From Octopus sinensis (taxonomy: Eukaryota), in NCBI RefSeq assembly GCF_006345805.1, contig NC_043005.1:2356001-2420000 (forward strand): a DNA stretch of 64,000 nucleotides, read 5' to 3'. Numbering within the stretch: the first letter of the stretch is position 1; the number at the start of each line of letters is the position of its first letter. Shown one piece after another: positions 8,586 to 55,990 of the stretch. Under the pieces are notes generated by a model. The model ran no database searches. It had not been told where the DNA came from and saw nothing but the letters and a program-made list of their open reading frames with translations. A program made the position numbers and the translations under genes.

Positions 8586-9440
8586 CTCTAAAATCGATGA
8601 ACAACCTGATACGTCTGCCACAAAACAAGCAAAACGGATCGAGCAGACTGCAAAAAAGAACGGGTAGAAACAAATTGAGGGGCGGTGGAGCCAGAAGCCT
8701 CTGCATGGACAGTATATACTTCGAAGTCGAAATGCTGATGTAGACCAGGCAACAACCCATTGAGAAGCTCAGGACTGAAACCAGAGACTGAAGGTTTCAT
8801 AGTGGTGGCACAACATCAAAGCTTGCGCACAAAACACTACCAGGCTAACGCCCTTCAAAACGGTTCTGACCCTAAATGCAGATTCTGCAACACATTTGAC
8901 GAAACAATGGACCATCTCGTTTCGGGATGTTCTGTGCTGACACCAAACGAATACAAAAATCGCTACGATAGGGTAGGACAGTATTTACATAGAGAAATAT
9001 GTAAACACTACAAAATCAGCGCTCCTACTTACTGGTACGACCATCATCTTGAGTCAGTCGTTGAAGGTATAAACGTCCCTATCCTCTGGGATTTCCCAGT
9101 CAACACCGACAGAACGATCCAAGTCAATCGACCAGGCATAATCATTAAAGACAGAGAAAAAAATACTTGTAGACTAATAGATGTAAGTGTTCCCACTGAT
9201 AAAAATATATCTGTCAAGGAATTTGACAATTTGAGTCAATATAAACACCTGGAAATTGAAATACAAAAGATGTGACATATTAAAGCGAGAATTGTTCTTG
9301 TTGTTGTAGGTGCCCTAGGTATGATAAAAAAGAGATGTCAGAAACATCTAGATAATATCCCAGGAGAACCATGTCTCAAAGAAATCAAAGAGATTGAGCT
9401 GACGCGTACTGCCCACATCCTTAGAAAAAACCCTATCCGT
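8586..9440 (+). mobile_element. R4/Dong-like non-LTR retrotransposon 3' fragment (zinc knuckle + restriction-like endonuclease)
   Basis: LRSSGLKPETEGFIVVAQHQSL, CRFC..ETMDHLVSGC, ILWDFPVNTDRTIQVNRPGI, LIDVSVP..KE..YKHLEIEI, ALGMIKK; interrupted by stops. Confidence 0.9.
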
Positions 9441-10354: not shown

Positions 10355-12530
10355 AAAGACAAACATATGAATGAGAAGGAAGGCGAAAAAATCTAAAACC
10401 TGGACACAGTGAAGAAGAGCCTAATGATTATGATACTCTGAAAATGAGAATAATCAAAAAACTGAAAACCACAGATCTCAGAACGGACCACCGACCATAC
10501 CTCCCAAAAATCAAAATAGACAATAAAACAACATCAATAATAAATTGTATAAACCTGGTCGTCACGGAACTGATAGCCACAGAAACAAATAGCAATATCA
10601 CTGAGCTAAATGACATGATATAGGCAGCAGCGACAAAAGAAGCTGGATACTCCCTCGAACCCATCCAAGCAGGAGGACCACCACCCAAACAAACCCTGTG
10701 GATAAATAACATCCAAAACAAAATACAAGAAATGAGAAAAGATCTGTCGATTCTTAATGAAATCGGTAGACAATCAACGCTACTAAGCAACAAAAAGAAA
10801 ACAAAAATACTCCGCAAATACAACATCACAGAAAAAGATTTACCTGAGATAAAAGAAAAGCTAAAGCAGGATATCCTTGCCAAAGCACAAAGGATCCGCC
10901 GGGACGAGAAACGCCAACGTTTCTTTGAACAAAACGAACAGTTCAACTCCAACCCCAAAAAATTCTACCAAAAACTTGGCAAAAATAAAATAGATATCAA
11001 TGCAGTACCACCAGCAGAAGTGGAAGAATTTTGGAAAGAAATATGATCGGCGAAGGAGCAATTTCAGAAAAGGACTATCTGAGGAATTTCAACCATGTTT
11101 CGTGGTCTGTTAGCACAACAACTCCTTTATAGAAAGTGCGTCACTTTAAACTTAGAAACCTCCCAAAACTCCCCATATAACAAACCCAACTATAACAACT
11201 GAAGAGGTCACCCAGGCACTGCAAAGACTAAGCAACTAGAATGCACCTGGGCACGACAAGTTCCCCAACTTCTGGTTAAAACATCTGGCAGGAATGCACA
11301 AATAGCTGGCTGAAAACTTTAACGACATACTAGCAGAGCCAGAGACAATGCCTGAATGGCTCACGAAAGGGAAAGCCATCCTAATTACCAAATTCAATGA
11401 AACGGCAAAACCACAAAAGTACAGACCTATAACCTGTCTCTCTACAATTTACAAAGCCTTTACCACAATGATATCGCAGAGATTAAGCAAGCATCTGGAA
11501 GAAAACAACCTGTTTCCAGAAGCGCAGAAGTGATGCTGCAAGGGCTCATATGGCTGTAAAGATCAACTAATGATCAATAAAGCCATAACTGAAAACAGCC
11601 GCAGAAAGAAAGTTCTCAATATGGCCATGATCGACTACCGAAAGGCTTTTGATAGTATTCCCCACACGTGGATCCTCGAAACATTAACCATGATCGAGGT
11701 ACCACCAATAATTATAAAATACATAAGACATTCTATGAATACATGGTAGACAGTGCTACAGCTCCAAACAAAAGAGGGACTTGTGAAAACCAAAGACATC
11801 CCCATTAGAAGAGGAAAATTCCAGGGAGACACGCTCTCTCCACTCCTTTTCTGCTTGGCACTGACACCTCTATCTGACATGCTAAATAGATCTGGATGCG
11901 GATACAAATGTTACGGCAAAACAATCAACCACCTTTTATATATGGATGACCTAAAACTATACGCTACAAATGATAAACAGCTGGAAACACTACTACAGAC
12001 AGTTCATGGATTTACCAAAGAAATAGATATGAAATTTGGATTAGAAAAATGTGCCAAAGCAACCCTGAAAAGAGGAAAACTAGTTAAGAGTAGCAACATC
12101 ACACTAGATAAAACCAATGAAATAAAAGAATTAGACCAAAGCCAGGCATACAAATACTTAGGAATCAATGAACTAGATACGATACAACACACACAAATGA
12201 AAGAGAAAATAAAGAAAGAATACTATAGATGAGTTAGATCAATACTAAAAACAGAGCTCAATGCTAAAAACAAGATAATAGGTATTAACACTTTAGCCAT
12301 CCCAGTTATAAATTACAGCTACAATATCCTTAACTGGACACTAAATGAACTAACCAAAATAGACAGGAAAACAAGAAAAATAAATACAGGATTTATGATG
12401 CACCACCCAACATCTGACATAGAAAGGCTATATATACAACGTATAGGAGGTGGTGGAGACCTTATACAGCTAGAAAGCTATTCCAAAATAACCACCATAG
12501 GACTACAAAAATACCTACTTCAGAAGCAAG
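10355..12530 (+). mobile_element. R4/Dong-like reverse transcriptase pseudogene
   Basis: YRPITCLSTIYKAFT, IDYRKAFDSIPHTWI, GKFQGDTLSPLLFCLALTPL, HLLYMDDLKLYA, YKYLGI, HHPTSDIERLY; multiple stops and frameshifts. Confidence 0.93.
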
Positions 12531-16326: not shown

Positions 16327-17407
16327 CAGTAGTTTTATTTTTATAGCGTGCTTTCACTTCACTACCGAGCGCAGCTCTGTGTGCCTTGGGTATGTGCTGT
16401 GATTTGTTGTGATGCTCTGATGGTTATTGTATGGAAAGTGTTCTGCGTAGGATGTGTGCAGTGCCTAGTAGTGCAATTTTCTGTATGTTATATGTGTTTG
16501 TAAGTCCTGGTGCTTTTGTTATGTATTTGTCTGAATATTTTTTATCATGCCTAATGCACCTACTATGATAGGAATTGTTTCTGTTTTCAGATTCCACATT
16601 CTGGTTACCTCTATTTCCAGGTCTTTGTATTTTGAGAGTTTCTCCATTTCTTTTAGAGACACGTTGTCATCTGCCGGTATTGATACATCAATTAGAAAGC
16701 ATTTTTTTTCTTCATGATCTCTGACAACTATATCTGGTCTGTTGGCCTTAATTTCTCTATCTGTGTGTATCGCCATATCCCAGAGTATGGTTGCCTTCTC
16801 GTTTTCTGTGACCTTTTCTGGTGTGTGCCTATACCATCTTTTTTCTGTTGTTATTCCATAATGTTGGCATAGCTTCCAATGTATGTAGGTTCCAACTCTG
16901 TCATGTCTGTGAATATATTCCTTCTTAGCCAGGACTGGGCAGCTATAGATAATATGATTTATTGTTTCTTGTCCATCTCCACATATTCTGCAGCTACTTG
17001 TAATATTTCTTTTCATTACATGTTTTTGGTAATTTCTGGTGGGGAGGCTTTGGTCTTGTGCTGCAATTAAAAATCCCCCTGTTTCTGCTTTGAGTCCTGA
17101 GCTTCTCAACCATTGCTGGGATTTTTCTTTGTCTATTTCTTTTGCGTTTAGTTTAGTCCAGTATTTACCATGAAGGGGCTTTTCTTGCCATCGTTTTATC
17201 ATGGTTCGTTGCTGTTCTATTTTTAGTTTGGATTTCATTTGTTTTATAGCTTTTGTTGTTTCTTCATCTTCTTCTTCTTCTTCTTCATGTTTATTAGGTG
17301 GCATGATTTCTTGTTTGTATTTGTCAGCTTCCTTAAATACTGAGAACAGTTTTTTGTTTTGCTCCTGTTTTGCTGCTATCTGGATCAGTTTTCCTGATCC
17401 AGATAGC

Positions 17408-17410
<3 letters not shown>
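16327..17410 (-). mobile_element. Dong-like element, 5'-truncated (about 1.08 kb), flanked by (ATT)n, inside the intron
   Basis: Open frame with WQEKPLHGKY, WLRSSGLKAETGGFLIAAQDQSL, CRICGDGQETINHIIYSC, RPDIVV, IDVSIP, EKLSKYKDLEIE. Confidence 0.93.
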
Positions 17411-17450
<40 letters not shown>

Positions 17451-17462
17451 TTTTTATTATTA

Positions 17463-17538
<76 letters not shown>

Positions 17539-17869
17539 CATTATTATTATTATATGTTTGGCTTCTGCTTTGTATTTGTGGAAGTTGACTCCAAATCTCA
17601 CCCAGGGACCTCAAGAGACAACAAGTTAGAAGTACAAGTTGGTGTTATGACTAGGGTGCCATATATTTGGTTTTGCCCACGGTATTGTTCTAGAGAATGC
17701 CTAAGTAAATTAAAAGTTTTCTTTAAAAGTAATTTGATTAGTAGATGATTGTCTGATGTTAAGATGACTGTAAAATATGTTTTCTATTCTGTATATTTAA
17801 AAGTATTCTGACACTGTTTACGGATTAAGATGTTTGGGGGATTACATGGACAATATTTTACGTAGGATA

Positions 17870-21952: not shown

Positions 21953-22592
21953 TATGTGTGTAATTATTTTAACACAATTTCGCGCATATTTCCTCATATA
22001 AGATACTCACACATTGATCCACATCGTACAAACACACACACACACACACACACACACCACACACACACACACACACACACCTAGCGAATCCATTCCCACC
22101 GACCAACGCACACCGGTAATTACATAGCCACGGATATACGCACACGAACAGACACAACAGAGGTAAGGCATGCTTAGGTGGACCCTTATAAAAATTCAAC
22201 AACAACTTTAATTCGCTAGAATATCATCAAACATTACAACCAACAGCAACTTTGAAAGGCATTGTAGCCACCACTTCTCCATGGCAATACTTCTATCACA
22301 AACAATAGGCCAACGGTATTTACGAGCAACTTTACAAACACGAGCGATTACATCGGGAAATAACAATAGACAAAGACAATATGATGGCAATGGTCACTAC
22401 CACTACCACCACCACTACCACCACCTCTACTACTACTACTACCACCACCACCACTACCACCACCACCTCTAATACTACTACTACTACTACCACCACCACC
22501 ACCACTACTACATTTACTACTGCTGCTGCTGCTACTACCACCACTACTACAACTACTACTACTACTACTACTACTATTACTACTACTACTAC

Positions 22593-22625
<33 letters not shown>

Positions 22626-23963
22626 TAATAATGATAATAATGCAACTTCAACTAACAACCACAGCAGTAACCACACACTGTCAACATCGACACCCCACCA
22701 CAAACAACAGCACAATACTACCACCACCACCACCACCACCGCCGCCGCCGCCCACCATTACCACCACCTCCACCACCTCCACCCGCAACACCAATGCAAC
22801 CAACACCAACAACGGCGCCGAGACTGCCACACCACCACCACCACCACCACCACGATGCGCAACAGTAAGAGACAATAACACCATTTACTTTCTTTAACAC
22901 CAACCACGTAGACATCTTCAGGACACAAACAACAACAGCAACAGCAACACGCCTCCCATGCCACACCACAACGAATACTTGTATTTACGGCGACACGAAA
23001 AACATCACCCAACACGAAAAACAATAAGAAAACCTGGAATAATAAAAAAAAAGGAGCATAAAATGAAATCTAAGAAATACTTGTTGAACCGACACCGCCA
23101 TCACGAACGGAGTTGCATGAGACTTCCTTGTAAACCACTCCACCATCACCACTCCCCACCACCCAGTACTGCTGCTACTACTACTACTACTATTACTACT
23201 ACAACTATATTTCAGTCGACCCGCACCCATTCAGGTACATCTTTTAGAACAAACCAGAAGACAAACGACCCTGATTCTCTGTTCCAAAAACGAGCTGACG
23301 ATGACGACGATGTTGATGATGATGACGATGATGACGATGATGGTGATGACGACGACGATGACGACGACTATGACTACGATGATGACGCAATGAGCGACGA
23401 TGATGCTGATACTGATGTTGATCATCATCATCATCATCATCATCATGTGAAGAAGAATTCCAAACACAACGGTTTCTTCCATGTTGTGTAATTTCATTCT
23501 TTCGTTCTTTCTTTTGTTATTTTTTTCCTATTAAAATTTGATTTTCTTTCTGCACGGAGTGAAGAATCGAACCCTTGAAACCAATAAACAAAAACCAACA
23601 GCAGTTGGCAAGGAAATTATTGGGTTCAGCTGGGGTGCGGTGGCGGACGGTGATGAAACAACTTCTCCTTTCTTTCTCAATTATACTCTTTCCCTCGTCT
23701 GCTCTTCCAATCGCCTGCACTCTCCATCTTTCTCTTCTCTCCCTTTCTCACTCTCTCTCTACCAATATCTCTCTCTCTACCAATATCTCTCTCTCTCTCT
23801 CTCTTTATCTATCTATCTAGCCATCTATGGTACTCTCAACCAGTTTCTCAATCTCACACACATACATATAACTTTTCCCTTTATTTTTCTTCTTTCTTTC
23901 TTTCACTCTCTCATTCTCTCTTTTCTGTTTGTATACACACACACACACACACACAAACATATA

Positions 23964-23994
<31 letters not shown>

Positions 23995-24212
23995 GACACG
24001 TGTATGTATATATGCATATATACATGGATGTATATATGTATAAATGTGTATATGTGTGTGTATACACATTTATATATATAATATATTTATATATACACAT
24101 ATATATACATATATGCATATATATATTTGTATATATGCAAATATACATAATATATGTGTGTATATATAAATGTATATATATGTACACATTCATATATATA
24201 TATATATACATG

Positions 24213-27865: not shown

Positions 27866-30800
27866 TTAACCCCTTGACAACGGTTGACGCAAATATGCGA
27901 TCACACGTTTGTGATCGCATATTTAACAAACGACTACGCTGCTACTCGTCCTCAAAGTGAATCCGAGCATATCCCCGACAGGTTCCCGGCGAAGGCGATG
28001 AAATCAAAGTGTTTCTTGCGCTGCTTATTCTCATGGGCATCGTAAGAAAACCCACCCTCGGTTCGTATTGGAGTAGGAACCCTCAAACAGTGACACCGTT
28101 TTTCGCCGACACTATGCCGAGTGATCGTTTTTTCGCGCTACTGAAAAACCTACACTTTAACTCGGGCGTCAACACCGGTGATAGGCTGCACAAACTTCAG
28201 CCAATTGTTGACGCAGTCGCAGACAAATTCAAAACTGTCTATATACCTACGCAAGATATTTCCACAGACGAAAATCTCTGGAAATTTAAGAGGTGGTTGC
28301 GATTCAGAGAGTACAACCCTACAAAATGTGCGCAGTTTGGAGTGAAAGTATATAAAGTTTGTCAGTCATCCGGTGTCGCATCTGGCTATACTTGGAACTA
28401 TAAAATATATATTGGCGAGGACAGGGTCGCGGACGTTCTAGCATCAGCTAATGTCGTCATATCATTGAATAATGAACTGTTAGAGAGAGGGTATAACATT
28501 TATATGGATGACTGGTTTTCCAGTCCTGACTTGTTTCAGCAGTTGCAGGCCAGAACAAATGCCTGTGGGTTGGTCCTCGCTTTCAGGAGGAACATGCCCC
28601 TCGATCTTCGAAAACCGAAACTTGAGAAAGGAGAATTTGCATACCGTTCGACGGACAGTGGTCCCCTAGCGTTGGTCTGACGAAACAGAAAGTACGTGCC
28701 CATGCTGAGTACGATGCACTCTGCTGCAATGTCTGAAACTGGCAAACGGAACCGTGCAGGGGACCCCATCATAAAACCCGATGTTGTACAGGACTACAAC
28801 AGAGCAATGAGTGGAGTGGATAGATCCGATCAGATGGCCACCACACACAAATCTGCGCGAAGATTCGGAAAATGGTACAAAAAGATATTTTTGTACTTGT
28901 GGATATGGCACTCGTGAACAGAGATCTGATTTGACGAATGCTGGGTGGCGAAGCAACTGGACTCGCATTTCGCGAGGCTTTGATAAATGAAATTATCGAA
29001 GTTTCCGAGCTGCTCAACTATCGAACGCGTGGACGTCCTCACGCACGACCGACTCCAAACCGGCTTCTGAACCGACAAGGACATTTTCCGCGCTTTATAC
29101 CACCAACGGAAAAAAAGCAGAGTCCGGCAAGGAAATGTGTTGTATGCACCTCACACCACCGTAGGCGCGAAACCAGATGTCGTTATCCGGACTGTGATGT
29201 GTCCCTTTGCATAATACCGTGTTTTGAGTTGTACCACAGGCAAGCTATTTTTTGAACTTGAGCAGAATAACTCTTGCATATCATATTATGATAAATAGCT
29301 TCACATAGTTCATTTTCATAAACCAGTAGACGTAAATGTACGACGCTATGTCATTGTAACGGTGAACGTAAATATACACAATAGGCGCGTTATTCAATGC
29401 CTCAATGTCAACAAGAGTCACGGCCCTGACGGCATACACCCACAGGTTATAAAGGCGTTGGCTCCGGTCATCTGCGAGCCTTTAACACTTCTATTCAATA
29501 TGTCATTGGCGACAGGTGTTATAGCTGCGGACTGGAGAACAGCGATAATTTGCCCAATTTTCAAGAAAGGGAGCCGTGAAGACCCGCTTAACTACCGACC
29601 GGTTTCCCTTACTTCAATAATCAGCAAGATGTTCGAAACCATCCTTAAGAAAAGTATGTTGCTCCACCTCCAAAACACAGCCTCTATCTCTGATTCCCAA
29701 CACGGCTTCGTGCCGAAGAGATCATGCTTGACCAACTTACTGGTAATGGAAGAATTGGTGACGCGTATCCTCGATGATGGTGATGCTGTTGACATCGTTT
29801 TATTGGACTTTGCCAAAGCTTTTGACTCGGTTAACCACCGCCTATTACTTGTCAAGCTTCAAGCATATCGTTTCCATCCGGATATTGTACGATGAGTTGG
29901 TGCCTTCCTCTCAGATCGGTCCTTCCAAGTCCAAGTTAATGGTTCGCTGTCCGACGTCTCCAGTGCGAGCAGTGGCGTGCCTCAAGGTTCAGTGCTTGGG
30001 CCCTTATTGTTCTTAGTCTTCATAAATGACTTGCCCGACGACCTCACACAATACACCCTTCTATTTGCCGATGATGTCAAACTGGTCGCTCCTCGCGGTG
30101 ATATAGATGATCTTCAACGTGTCAAAGTGCTGTCATCTGCCTGTTGGCTCTTCTCCTGCAACTCAACTTGATTTCGAGCCGGGTCGTCTGCTGCTGGAGA
30201 GGACCGATCAGGTAAAGGACCTGGGTATCTTGGTGGATTCTTCCTTCTTGCCTTCAGCCCATGCGTCCATGCTGCCAACAAAGCATGCTGAGTTCTGTTT
30301 TTGATTCGACAGTCATTCGGAATGCTCACAGCAGCCATATTCCTACCGCTCTATGTCACGCTGGTGAGACCCATATTGGAGTATGGGATTCAAGCCTCTT
30401 CTCCTTATCTCCTCAAAGACATACATCATCTCGAAAGAGTCCAGAAGCTGGCTACCCGCATGGTTCTTGGTCTCAAGCATTTGTCTTACGAAGAAAGGCT
30501 GAGGACGCTCGACCTTTATTCTCTAGAAAAACGACGGCGCCGTGGTGATCTCATTCTCGCCCACAACATCATAAGCGGAAAGTGTAACCTCTCGAAAGAG
30601 TTGTTCTTCACTCCTGCTCCAGAGCGTCGGCTTCGGGGTCACTCCGAAAAGCTCTATCTGCGACGATTTCATCTCAATCGAAGGAGAGGGGCTTTCTCCC
30701 TCCGGGTTGCGGATCCGTGGAATAAGCTGCCGGACGAGATAGTGAGGATGCCGACGACCGCTTGGTTCAAAGTCTCCCTTGACCACAAATGGCCTGAACT

Positions 30801-40241: not shown

Positions 40242-40653
40242 TATTTCTGTATTGCTCACAAGGGTAAACACAGAGGGGACAAACAAGGACAAACAAACGG
40301 ATCAAGTCGATTACATTGACTCCAGTGCGTAACTGGTACTTATTTAATCGACCCCGAAAGGAGGAAAGGCAAAGCCGACCTCGGCGGAATTTGAACTCAG
40401 AACGTCACGGCAAACGAAATACCTATTTCTTTACTACCAACAAGGGGCTAAACACAGAGAGGACAAACAAGGACAGACAAAGGGATTAAGTCAATTACAT
40501 CGACCCCAGTGCGTAACTGGTACTTATTTAATCGACCCGAAAGGAGGAAAGGCAAAGCCGACCTCGGCGGAATTTGAACTCAGAACGTAACGGCAGACGA
40601 AATACTGCTAAGCATTTCGCCCGGCGTGCTAACCTTTCTGCCAGCTCACCGAC
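40242..40653 (-). mobile_element. SINE family A with tandemly duplicated 3' part
   Basis: Two consecutive body/tail units joined at AAAGAAATAGGTATTTCGT. Confidence 0.85.
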
Positions 40654-50275: not shown

Positions 50276-51084
50276 GAGTGAGAGAGCAGTGCGTGCCATC
50301 AAAGTGATACTGGGGTAAAATATACGAAGCCCAGCATACCCATCATGACTACCTATTTCTTTATTACCCACAAGGGGCTAAACATAGAGGGGACAAACAA
50401 AGACAGACATAGGTATTAAGTCGATTATATCGACCCCAGTGTGTAACTGGTACTTAATTTATCGACCCGAAAGGATGAAAGGTAAAGTCGACCTCGGCGG
50501 AATTTGAACTCACAACGTAACGGCAGACGAAAAACCGCAAAGCATTTCGCCTGGCGTGCTAACGTTTCTGCCAGCTCGCCGCCTTAGTGACTACCTGTCT
50601 GACTACCTGTCTGATAAGGGTACACTAGGCACATGCATCACAACCATATGTGCGCGACATGGTGATCTTATATCAAGATAAACAGCACATGACCTTGCAG
50701 GTAGGGCCCAGTTAGAATGTTCTTCTGGTCGAGTAGCCCATCCCGCTCAAAAGGTCCCTGAATAAGGGTTGTTTAAGGATGTTGAACGAAACACCCATGT
50801 TTCCAGAGGTGAAATATTCAAAACCCAAAGAATCCCTCTCAACACATGGCTATGATGCTCCCTCACAACTTCTGCTTGTGATCAGAGATGCACATATCGT
50901 CAGCCACTAAGGGACATGCTCAACTGGCTATGGTCAAACAACTGACAAGCAAATCTGTGGTATTGAGCAAAATATTTGCTGTAGTCCATCTTTTATACCA
51001 AGGCAAAACAATGTACATGATAACACTTCCAATCAGGTAAGATCAGAAGCCATGAGAACCACTGCCTGGTACTGCATCAGGGAT
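50276..51084 (-). mobile_element. Non-coding (AAT)n-targeted element (about 580 bp) carrying a nested SINE
   Basis: Flanked by (ATT)n on both sides; an uninterrupted partial copy lies at 56823-57188; no ORF. Confidence 0.75.
50354..50583 (-). mobile_element. SINE family A, full length, nested
   Basis: GGCGGCGAGCTGGCAGAAACG head to AATAAAGAAATA tail; TGACTACC is repeated on both sides (50346-50353 and 50588-50595). Confidence 0.9.
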
Positions 51085-53427: not shown

Positions 53428-53565
53428 TTACTTTCTGCCGACCTTGTCCAAATCAGGAATATTAATCAATGTATCGATCATGCCGTGATTACGTTTGGAC
53501 AAACCCCGCGGTTTATCCATGTGAATTGCTATCTCCAGAATTTTGCTGGCTAAACCAATTATTTC
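53428..53565 (-). CDS. Pdf: Terminal coding exon of a cerebrin / pigment-dispersing factor (PDF)-family neuropeptide precursor
   Basis: The minus strand has a strong acceptor (TTTTTTTTCTCTCTCGTTTCAG, AG at 53567-53566). The phase-0 exon reads EIIGLASKILEIAIHMDKPRGLSKR-NHGMIDTLINIPDLDKV-GRK*. The 17-mer between KR and the amidation signal GRK matches recalled Aplysia cerebrin NGGTADALYNLPDLEKI-amide at 9/17 positions, and the preceding EIIxLA helix matches cerebrin precursors. The signal-peptide exon was not identified. Confidence 0.9.
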   Translation of the reverse strand, partial: EIIGLASKILEIAIHMDKPRGLSKRNHGMIDTLINIPDLDKVGRK

Positions 53566-53688
53566 CTGAAACGAGAGAGAAAAAAACAATAAGAATATCA
53601 ACAAGCGAATAAATCACTGGTGATGGCAGCCATGGCTGTAATCAGCGAGATCTCGTCCGAGCAACGTTATTACGATTATTGTTGTTGT

Positions 53689-55013: not shown

Positions 55014-55350
55014 GGCGGCGAACTGGCAGAATCTTTAGCATACCGGGTGAAATGCTTAGCAGTATTTCGTCTGCCATTACGTTCTGAGTTCAAATTCCGC
55101 CGAGGTCGACTTTGCCTTTCATCCTTTCGGGATCGATAAATTAAGTACCAGTTACGCACTGGGGTAGATATAATCAACTTAATCCATTTGTCCGTCCTTG
55201 TTTGTCTCCTCTGTGTTTAGCCCCTTGTTGGTAGTAAAGAAATAGGTATTTCATCTGTTGCTACGTTCTGAGTTCAAATTCCGACGAAGTCGACTTTGCT
55301 TTTCATCCTTTCGGGGTGGATAAATTAAGTACCAGTCGAATACTGGGGTC
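55014..55350 (+). mobile_element. SINE family A with partial 3' duplication
   Basis: GGCGGCGAACTGGCAGAATC head; junction AAAGAAATAGGTATTTCATCTG at about 55240-55260. Further partial cores lie at 55575-55650 and 56648-56765. Confidence 0.85.
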
Positions 55351-55445: not shown

Positions 55446-55990
55446 TACTACTACTACTACTACTACTACTACTTGCTGGAACCACGAAAAATTCACAGTA
55501 AACATAAAAAATGTAAGCATCTGTAAACAGTGTACTGGTTCCGTGAGAAATGTTTGCATATTATGACCAACTGTCTTTACGCTCTGAGTTCAAATTCTGC
55601 CGAGATCGACTTTGCCTTTCATCCTTTCGGGGTCGATAAATTAAGTGTCACTTATGTAATCAACTGGCCCACTCCCTTCAAAATATTCAGGCCTAGAAAA
55701 GTATTTTGTGACAGTTATTGAATATAGAAAATAATGTAACACCAATGACTATACAATCCAACCAAAATATCACATTTAGACAAACGTAAACGGAATTACT
55801 ATTTAACCTTAGAATATGTCGTACATATTCAAAGAACCTTAATGTACAAATTGAAATGCAAAAGAACGAATTAATAAATGGATTTATGAATGAAAGTTTG
55901 GTAATTGCGTTTATTTCCACAACGCAACACTTATTATTGTAAACATGTTTTAAAACTAACCTAAACTATACACACACACACACAAATACA

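What the first reader, a model, noticed from the sequence alone, without database searches (positions are those of the whole stretch)
53428..53565. Cerebrin/PDF neuropeptide exon invisible to the ORF track
Seen: acceptor + EIIGLASKILEIAIHMDKPRGLS-KR-NHGMIDTLINIPDLDKV-G-RK-stop. Known: molluscan cerebrins are 17-residue amidated PDF homologues (Aplysia NGGTADALYNLPDLEKIamide, recalled). Predicted mature peptide: NHGMIDTLINIPDLDKV-NH2 (53490-53440). It carries His2, Met4 and Ile9 in place of the Aplysia Gly2, Thr4 and Tyr9.
Basis: partly seen in the sequence, partly recalled or inferred. Interest (0 to 1): 0.72.

Follow-up and report, generated by a model that had tools for sequence, protein, structure and literature searches.

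The report
Octopus cerebrin/PDF neuropeptide exon, already annotated

Summary
On the minus strand, 53565..53428 follows a strong polypyrimidine tract and a CAG acceptor. It translates to EIIGLASKILEIAIHMDKPRGLS-KR-NHGMIDTLINIPDLDKV-G-RK-stop.

The interpretation also holds. A profile built from 21 published non-cephalopod lophotrochozoan PDF/cerebrin precursors hits this exon and nothing else in the six-frame translation of the window (56.3 bits, E 2.9e-16). The next best hit scores 8.6 bits, and 40 resampled control windows reach at most 9.6 bits.

It is not new. [quoted passage not shown] That sequence is printed in the supplement of Thiel et al. 2021 (PMC8557429), next to a pygmy-squid (Idiosepius notoides) transcript with the same architecture (mature peptide 13/17 identical).

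The signal-peptide exon (residues 1-31 of that model) has no match in the window. It must therefore lie more than 10.4 kb upstream, beyond coordinate 64000.

The exon escaped the ORF track because the mechanical ORF is only 58 codons, with a bacterial TTG start, and the default minimum is 60.

What remains open is only what is open for the whole family in cephalopods: detection of the peptide, its receptor and its function. Interest is low.

The parts
53566..53604 (-). 3' end of the intron: polypyrimidine tract, candidate branch point TTGAT (53602-53598) and the CAG acceptor (53568-53566)
   Evidence: sequence. Identity to XP_014770792.1 starts at the first codon after the AG. The in-frame codons upstream (FIRLLIFLLFFSLSFQ, closed by a TGA at 53616-53614) do not match the model's residues 1-31. 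The branch point is a consensus guess only.
53428..53565 (-). Terminal coding exon of the cerebrin/PDF prohormone gene (45 codons plus TAA), splice phase 0
   Evidence: 100% over residues 32-76 of XP_014770792.1, E 2.4e-26; family profile 56.3 bits, E 2.9e-16
53497..53565 (-). Precursor-related peptide region EIIGLASKILEIAIHMDKPRGLS; it aligns to the conserved profile segment (qeilslAarIikiam) that precedes the hormone in PDF/cerebrin precursors
   Evidence: aligned to that segment; 10.8 bits on its own, and it also aligns to the crustacean precursor-related peptide in the arthropod profile.
53491..53496 (-). Lys-Arg dibasic prohormone-convertase site
   Evidence: KR occupies this position in the lophotrochozoan precursors listed.
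53440..53490 (-). Mature 17-residue peptide NHGMIDTLINIPDLDKV (predicted C-terminal Val-amide; calculated [M+H]+ 1907.006)
   Evidence: 13/17 identical to Idiosepius, 11/17 to Scutopus, 9/17 to Aplysia cerebrin; 36.2 bits alone; mass
53431..53439 (-). Gly amide donor (53439-53437) followed by Arg-Lys (53436-53431), removed by carboxypeptidase
   Evidence: The same G-[KR][KR] ending is seen in family members.
53428..53430 (-). TAA stop codon
53339..53344 (-). Candidate polyadenylation signal AATAAA, 86 nt after the stop
   Evidence: This is weak evidence: the surrounding DNA is about 27% G+C, so the hexamer could be chance.

Best explanation
This is the second and last coding exon of the octopus cerebrin/PDF-type prohormone gene, RefSeq 'cerebrin prohormone-like' (XP_014770792.1 in Octopus bimaculoides). 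Exon 1 encodes Met1-Thr31: the signal peptide plus a short spacer. It lies outside the window, more than 10.4 kb upstream on the minus strand. It splices in phase 0 onto 53565. Inferred steps, from established knowledge of neuropeptide processing: the 76-residue preprohormone enters the secretory pathway and loses its signal peptide. Prohormone convertases cut after Lys-Arg (53496-53491). Carboxypeptidase removes the C-terminal Arg-Lys. Peptidylglycine alpha-amidating monooxygenase converts the exposed Gly into a C-terminal amide. The product is NHGMIDTLINIPDLDKV-NH2. By homology, the peptide is a neuromodulator acting on a class B (secretin-type) PDF-receptor GPCR that signals through cAMP. 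Its physiological role in cephalopods is unknown. In Aplysia, cerebrin alters the feeding motor programme. Shown here: the sequence, the splice acceptor, family membership and identity to the annotated model. Inferred: processing, amidation, receptor and function.
For:: exact sequence, acceptor, dibasic and amidation signals. XP_014770792.1 and the Idiosepius notoides transcript, as printed in Thiel et al. 2021 (PMC8557429), supplementary file 26; tblastn of that protein gives 45/45 identity at 53565..53431 (E 2.4e-26) and no match for residues 1-31 anywhere in the window; a profile of 21 non-cephalopod precursors hits only this exon (56.3 bits, E 2.9e-16), covering profile positions 41-86, the C-terminal end of the model; control windows reach at most 9.6 bits; the motif is unique; identities are tabulated; the mature part and the precursor-related part both contribute (36.2 and 10.8 bits); an arthropod PDH/PDF profile ranks the exon first in the window (14.6 bits, E 0.003). 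Literature: PDF was found in all eight molluscan classes (PMC6425005). [quoted passage not shown] 2001, as cited in PMC4772807). PDF receptors are class B GPCRs signalling through cAMP (PMC7658428).
Against: No transcript or peptide data could be examined directly here. The RefSeq entry is a 'PREDICTED' model, known to me only through a paper's supplement. Exon 1 is not in the window, so the full gene could not be reconstructed. The large protein collection returned nothing for the exon or for Aplysia cerebrin, so it added no independent support. It appears not to hold these animal proteins. Pfam gave no hit. The species of the window is not established: 45/45 identity fits O. bimaculoides best, but a close relative is not excluded.
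Confidence: 0.94

Rival explanations
1. A non-functional duplicate or pseudo-exon of the cerebrin gene, with the expressed copy elsewhere in the genome.
For: Exon 1 is absent from the 10.4 kb upstream that the window holds. The region is full of transposon debris and simple repeats.
Against: The reading frame is intact and identical in 45/45 residues to the annotated protein. A canonical acceptor sits exactly at the boundary of homology. A processed pseudogene would carry exon 1 contiguously and no intron. Introns longer than 10 kb are ordinary in octopus genomes (general knowledge). No second copy is in the window.
Confidence: 0.04
2. A chance open frame in AT-rich DNA that merely resembles a neuropeptide.
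For: The exon is short (46 codons) and has no start codon of its own. Pfam does not recognise it.
Against: The family profile gives E 2.9e-16, against at most 9.6 bits in 40 control windows. The strict motif has 0 hits in the controls. The sequence is identical to a published protein.
Confidence: 0.005
3. The same gene, but in a different Octopus species whose genome annotation lacks it. The exon would then be a new annotation for that species, though not a new gene.
For: The window's origin is not given. The protein collection holds no protein sharing even three 5-residue words with the exon.
Against: Identity is 45/45, including the fast-evolving spacer region. The Idiosepius orthologue keeps only 30/45. 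That points to O. bimaculoides itself or a very close relative. The collection also lacks Aplysia cerebrin, so its silence says nothing about annotation.
Confidence: 0.15

Closest known systems
[quoted passage not shown] 2021, PMC8557429, supplementary file 26)
   Same: Residues 32-76 are identical to the window exon (45/45). Same KR site, same 17-mer, same G-RK-stop ending.
   Different: Nothing in the part that can be compared. Residues 1-31 (MQKFLVVMIIAAILACVSTFQSVEARQDEVT) are encoded outside the window.
Idiosepius notoides PDF/cerebrin precursor (transcriptome contig idiosepiusNotoides.295702, De Oliveira et al. 2019 data set)
   Same: Same 76-residue architecture. Mature peptide NHGLIDTIINLPDLDKI is 13/17 identical and all four changes are conservative. 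It shares His2 and Ile9, so these are shared by the two coleoid cephalopods compared, not octopus peculiarities. It ends in the same G-RK.
   Different: 30/45 identity over the exon. The spacer and the precursor-related peptide have diverged.
Aplysia californica cerebrin prohormone NP_001191498.1 (Li et al. 2001)
   Same: 17-residue amidated peptide at the extreme C-terminus of a short precursor, preceded by KR and followed by G plus basic residues. A conserved REIISLAARLIKLSM-type segment lies upstream. The N-x-G-x-x-D-x-L-x-N-[LI]-P-D-L core is shared.
   Different: 9/17 identity. The octopus peptide has His2, Met4, Ile5, Thr7, Ile9, Ile11, Asp15 and Val17. Only the Aplysia peptide has been isolated and tested physiologically.
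Arthropod pigment-dispersing hormone/factor (PDH/PDF) precursors
   Same: Same precursor plan: signal peptide, a precursor-related peptide, KR, a C-terminal amidated hormone beginning with Asn, then G plus basic residues. An arthropod profile ranks the exon first in the window (E 0.003). The literature treats cerebrins as PDF orthologues.
   Different: The arthropod hormone has 18 residues (NSELINSLLGLPK...). The Pfam scan returned no family at all for the exon at E up to 10, so no arthropod-type PDH model recognised it. The PDL motif replaces the arthropod PK motif.

Membership tests
Lophotrochozoan cerebrin/PDF-type prohormone | Mature peptide of about 17 residues with the core N-x-G-x-x-D-x-[LI]-x-N-[LIM]-P-D-L | tested here: met
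   the strict motif matches once in the window and never in 40 control windows. Identity to published members is 6-13 of 17.
Lophotrochozoan cerebrin/PDF-type prohormone | Hormone is the last element of the precursor, preceded by a dibasic site and followed by Gly (amide donor) plus basic residues and the stop | tested here: met
   ...S-KR-[17-mer]-G-RK-stop. Searches show the same layout in the published precursors.
Lophotrochozoan cerebrin/PDF-type prohormone | Conserved segment (consensus qeilslAarIikiam) between the signal peptide and the hormone | tested here: met
   One search aligns EIIGLASKILEIAI to that segment; this part alone scores 10.8 bits (E 0.044 at the scale of the window), which is supportive but weak on its own.
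Lophotrochozoan cerebrin/PDF-type prohormone | Significant match to a family profile built without cephalopod sequences | tested here: met
   56.3 bits, E 2.9e-16; the next hit in the window scores 8.6 bits; controls reach at most 9.6 bits.
Lophotrochozoan cerebrin/PDF-type prohormone | N-terminal signal peptide | not testable with these tools
   Exon 1 is not in the window. The published model begins MQKFLVVMIIAAILACVSTFQS, a typical hydrophobic leader, but no signal-peptide predictor was run.
Lophotrochozoan cerebrin/PDF-type prohormone | Expressed in neurons and processed to the amidated peptide | not testable with these tools
   No transcriptome or peptidome data could be queried. The papers searched describe no detection of this peptide in a cephalopod.
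PDF signalling system | Peptide activates a class B PDF-receptor GPCR | not testable with these tools
   Known for Drosophila and C. elegans (PMC7658428). PDF/cerebrin receptor orthologues are reported in lophotrochozoans (PMC8557429). No receptor gene is in this window.
Arthropod PDH/PDF sensu stricto (Pfam Pigment_DH) | 18-residue NSELINS[IL]L[GS][LI]P-type hormone recognised by the Pfam model | tested here: not met
   Pfam returned no family for the exon or for the mature segment at E up to 10; an arthropod precursor profile gives only 14.6-14.9 bits (E about 0.003). The exon is a PDF-type relative but not an arthropod-type PDH.

The most novel reading that the evidence does not exclude
The segment upstream of the hormone (EIIGLASKILEIAIHMD...) is recognisably conserved from octopus to annelids, brachiopods and nemerteans, and faintly to crustacean PDH precursor-related peptides. 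It could therefore be a second functional product of the gene, for example a co-released peptide or a sorting or chaperoning segment for the hormone, rather than an inert spacer. Separately, the shared His2/Ile9 form in the two coleoids compared might reflect co-evolution with the cephalopod PDF receptor. My evidence neither tests nor excludes either idea.
Probability: 0.2. Interest if true: 0.35.

Novelty: already known. Interest (0 to 1): 0.08.

Why it matters
The finding adds little. The gene is already named in RefSeq and has been used in published comparative neuropeptide sets. It does show that the first-stage reader can spot a short terminal neuropeptide exon, with no start codon, that a 60-codon ORF filter misses. 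It also shows that such calls can be verified quickly with a family profile. The biology of PDF/cerebrin signalling in cephalopods is an open field: where it is expressed, whether it has circadian, visual or feeding roles, and which receptor it uses. This window offers no new handle on any of that beyond the sequence already published.

Tried and rejected
1. The large protein collection, queried with the 45-aa exon and with a concatenation of Aplysia cerebrin and a Platynereis PDF segment, returned no candidate either time. The Aplysia segment was later confirmed letter for letter. The collection evidently lacks these animal proteins, so its silence is uninformative.
2. Pfam and NCBIfam scans of the exon gave no family. 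The peptide is too short and too diverged for the arthropod-based model.
3. Full-text search for the peptide string and sub-strings found 0 papers. The sequence sits only in supplementary files. The supplements of De Oliveira et al. 2019 are truncated as stored and did not contain the motif.
4. A search for exon 1 in the window by tblastn and exact word search found only simple-repeat noise.
I did not attempt it by another route.
6. The Sepia officinalis neuropeptidome paper (Zatylny-Gaudin 2016) is not held.
7. I did not run the 1.84-billion-protein representative search, structure prediction or fold search. The identity was already settled, and a 17-residue peptide gives no meaningful fold.
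8. A read-through of the acceptor, in which the in-frame 'cag' gives a Gln that happens to mimic the family's RQEI consensus, was considered and rejected. The frame is closed by a TGA 16 codons upstream and holds no ATG. The published octopus and Idiosepius proteins have different residues there.

Full report
OBSERVATION. The minus strand of 53565..53428 translates to EIIGLASKILEIAIHMDKPRGLSKRNHGMIDTLINIPDLDKVGRK followed by TAA. Immediately upstream lies ttgttgatattcttattgtttttttctctctcgtttcag, a long polypyrimidine tract ending in a CAG acceptor. The mechanical ORF lister sees this frame only as a 58-codon ORF with a bacterial TTG start (53428..53604). That is below the default 60-codon minimum, which is why it was 'invisible to the ORF track'. 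The frame is closed by a TGA at 53616-53614 and has no ATG, so it cannot be a free-standing gene. It needs an upstream exon.

CONTEXT. The window is 27-46% G+C. It is dense with microsatellites, LINE reverse-transcriptase fragments, a piggyBac-type transposase fragment and a short SINE-like repeat present in six copies. This is the texture of a large animal genome, consistent with an octopus.

IDENTIFICATION. The general protein collection gave nothing, and neither did Pfam or NCBIfam. The literature settled the matter. Bivalve papers print cerebrin/PDF-like 17-mers with the same core: NLGTVDSLYNLPDLLYR-amide in oysters (PMC4200219) and NAGTIDSLYNLPDLFAA-amide in scallop (PMC5996578).

The query collection in the supplement of Thiel et al. 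2021 (PMC8557429, supplementary file 26) lists dozens of PDF/cerebrin precursors. [quoted passage not shown] Its last 45 residues are identical to the window exon.

tblastn of this protein against the window places residues 32-76 at 53565..53431 with 100% identity (E 2.4e-26). It finds no match for residues 1-31. The splice junction is therefore Thr31|Glu32, in phase 0, at the acceptor seen. Exon 1 (signal peptide and spacer) lies beyond coordinate 64000, more than 10.4 kb upstream.

A transcriptome contig from the pygmy squid Idiosepius notoides is in the same file. It has the same 76-residue plan and the mature peptide NHGLIDTIINLPDLDKI: 13/17 identical, with conservative changes only, and 30/45 over the exon.

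INDEPENDENT MEMBERSHIP TEST. I built a profile HMM from 21 published precursors of gastropods, bivalves, chitons, scaphopods, aplacophorans, annelids, brachiopods and nemerteans. No cephalopod was included. I searched the six-frame translation of the whole window, 2043 stop-free pieces.

- One hit: this exon, 56.3 bits, E 2.9e-16. It aligns to profile positions 41-86, that is, the conserved upstream segment, the KR site, the hormone and the G-basic end.
- The runner-up scored 8.6 bits, a CA-repeat translation against the signal-peptide part of the model.
- In 40 first-order Markov resamplings of the window, the best score per window was 4.4-9.6 bits. The strict family motif never occurred.
- Scored separately, the hormone segment gives 36.2 bits and the upstream segment 10.8 bits. 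The homology therefore covers the whole exon, not only the 17-mer.
- A profile of 11 arthropod PDH/PDF precursors also ranks this exon first in the window, but weakly (14.6 bits, E 0.003). This agrees with the published view that cerebrins are the lophotrochozoan PDF orthologues (PMC6425005; PMC8557429; PMC4772807). It also shows that the exon is not an arthropod-type PDH in the narrow sense.

MECHANISM. Shown: the sequence signals. Inferred from established prohormone biochemistry: signal-peptide removal, convertase cleavage after Lys-Arg, carboxypeptidase trimming of Arg-Lys, and amidation at the expense of Gly. The product is NHGMIDTLINIPDLDKV-NH2, with a calculated [M+H]+ of 1907.006. Inferred from homology: action on a class B PDF-receptor GPCR coupled to cAMP (PMC7658428). 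In Aplysia, cerebrin changes the feeding motor pattern (Li et al. 2001, cited in PMC4772807). No functional or peptidomic work on the cephalopod peptide turned up in the searchable library. An AATAAA lies 86 nt after the stop (53344-53339) and is a plausible polyadenylation signal, but it is weak evidence in DNA this AT-rich.

RIVALS. A chance ORF is excluded by the statistics above. A dead duplicate is unlikely: the frame is intact and identical to the annotated protein, a canonical acceptor sits exactly at the homology boundary, and there is no second copy in the window. It can only be excluded finally by mapping transcripts. The window might come from a close relative of O. bimaculoides rather than that species. 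That would change only whose annotation is concerned.

VERDICT. It carries the RefSeq name 'cerebrin prohormone-like' and has been used in a published comparative data set since at least 2021. PDF was reported for cephalopods in 2019. Interest is low.

Noticed in passing
window 55106-55131, 55290-55315, 55606-55631 (minus strand); 40353-40378, 40536-40561, 50466-50491 (plus strand): A SINE-like repeat with the core CCCGAAAGGATGAAAGGCAAAGTCGA occurs six times in the window (0 expected by chance). Three copies lie in the cerebrin intron in the same orientation as the gene, each next to long AAT/ATT microsatellites.
   Followed up: partly
window 28009-28680 (+): This ORF is a fragment of a piggyBac-type transposase (Pfam DDE_Tnp_1_7, E 6.8e-45, covering profile positions 43-262 of 349).
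   Followed up: partly
window 11753-12232 (+), 29362-29895 (+), 8760-9275 (+), 16519-17601 (-): Fragments of non-LTR retrotransposons: RVT_1 reverse-transcriptase pieces (E 1.7e-14 and 1.1e-12) and two zf-RVT tails. One of the tails is only marginal (21.3 bits, below the 27.5-bit cut-off).
   Followed up: partly
window 53489-53518: The DNA encoding DKPRGLS (GATAAACCGCGGGGTTTGTCC) is a near-palindrome around a CCGCGG core. The opposite strand therefore translates to LRLDKPRGLS and produced a spurious plus-strand tblastn hit. It is probably a coincidence.
   Followed up: no
window 53568-53566: The acceptor trinucleotide CAG is in frame and would read as Gln, mimicking the family consensus R-Q-E-I-I just before EII. 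The HMM alignment therefore starts one residue too early. The published octopus and Idiosepius proteins show this is not coding.
   Followed up: yes
window 22332-23491: Very long GTT/AAC-type and homopolymer-codon runs produce ORFs of poly-Val, poly-Thr, poly-Asp and poly-His on both strands, with a strong negative GC skew (-0.45 at 22001-24000). This is simple-repeat DNA, not genes.
   Followed up: no
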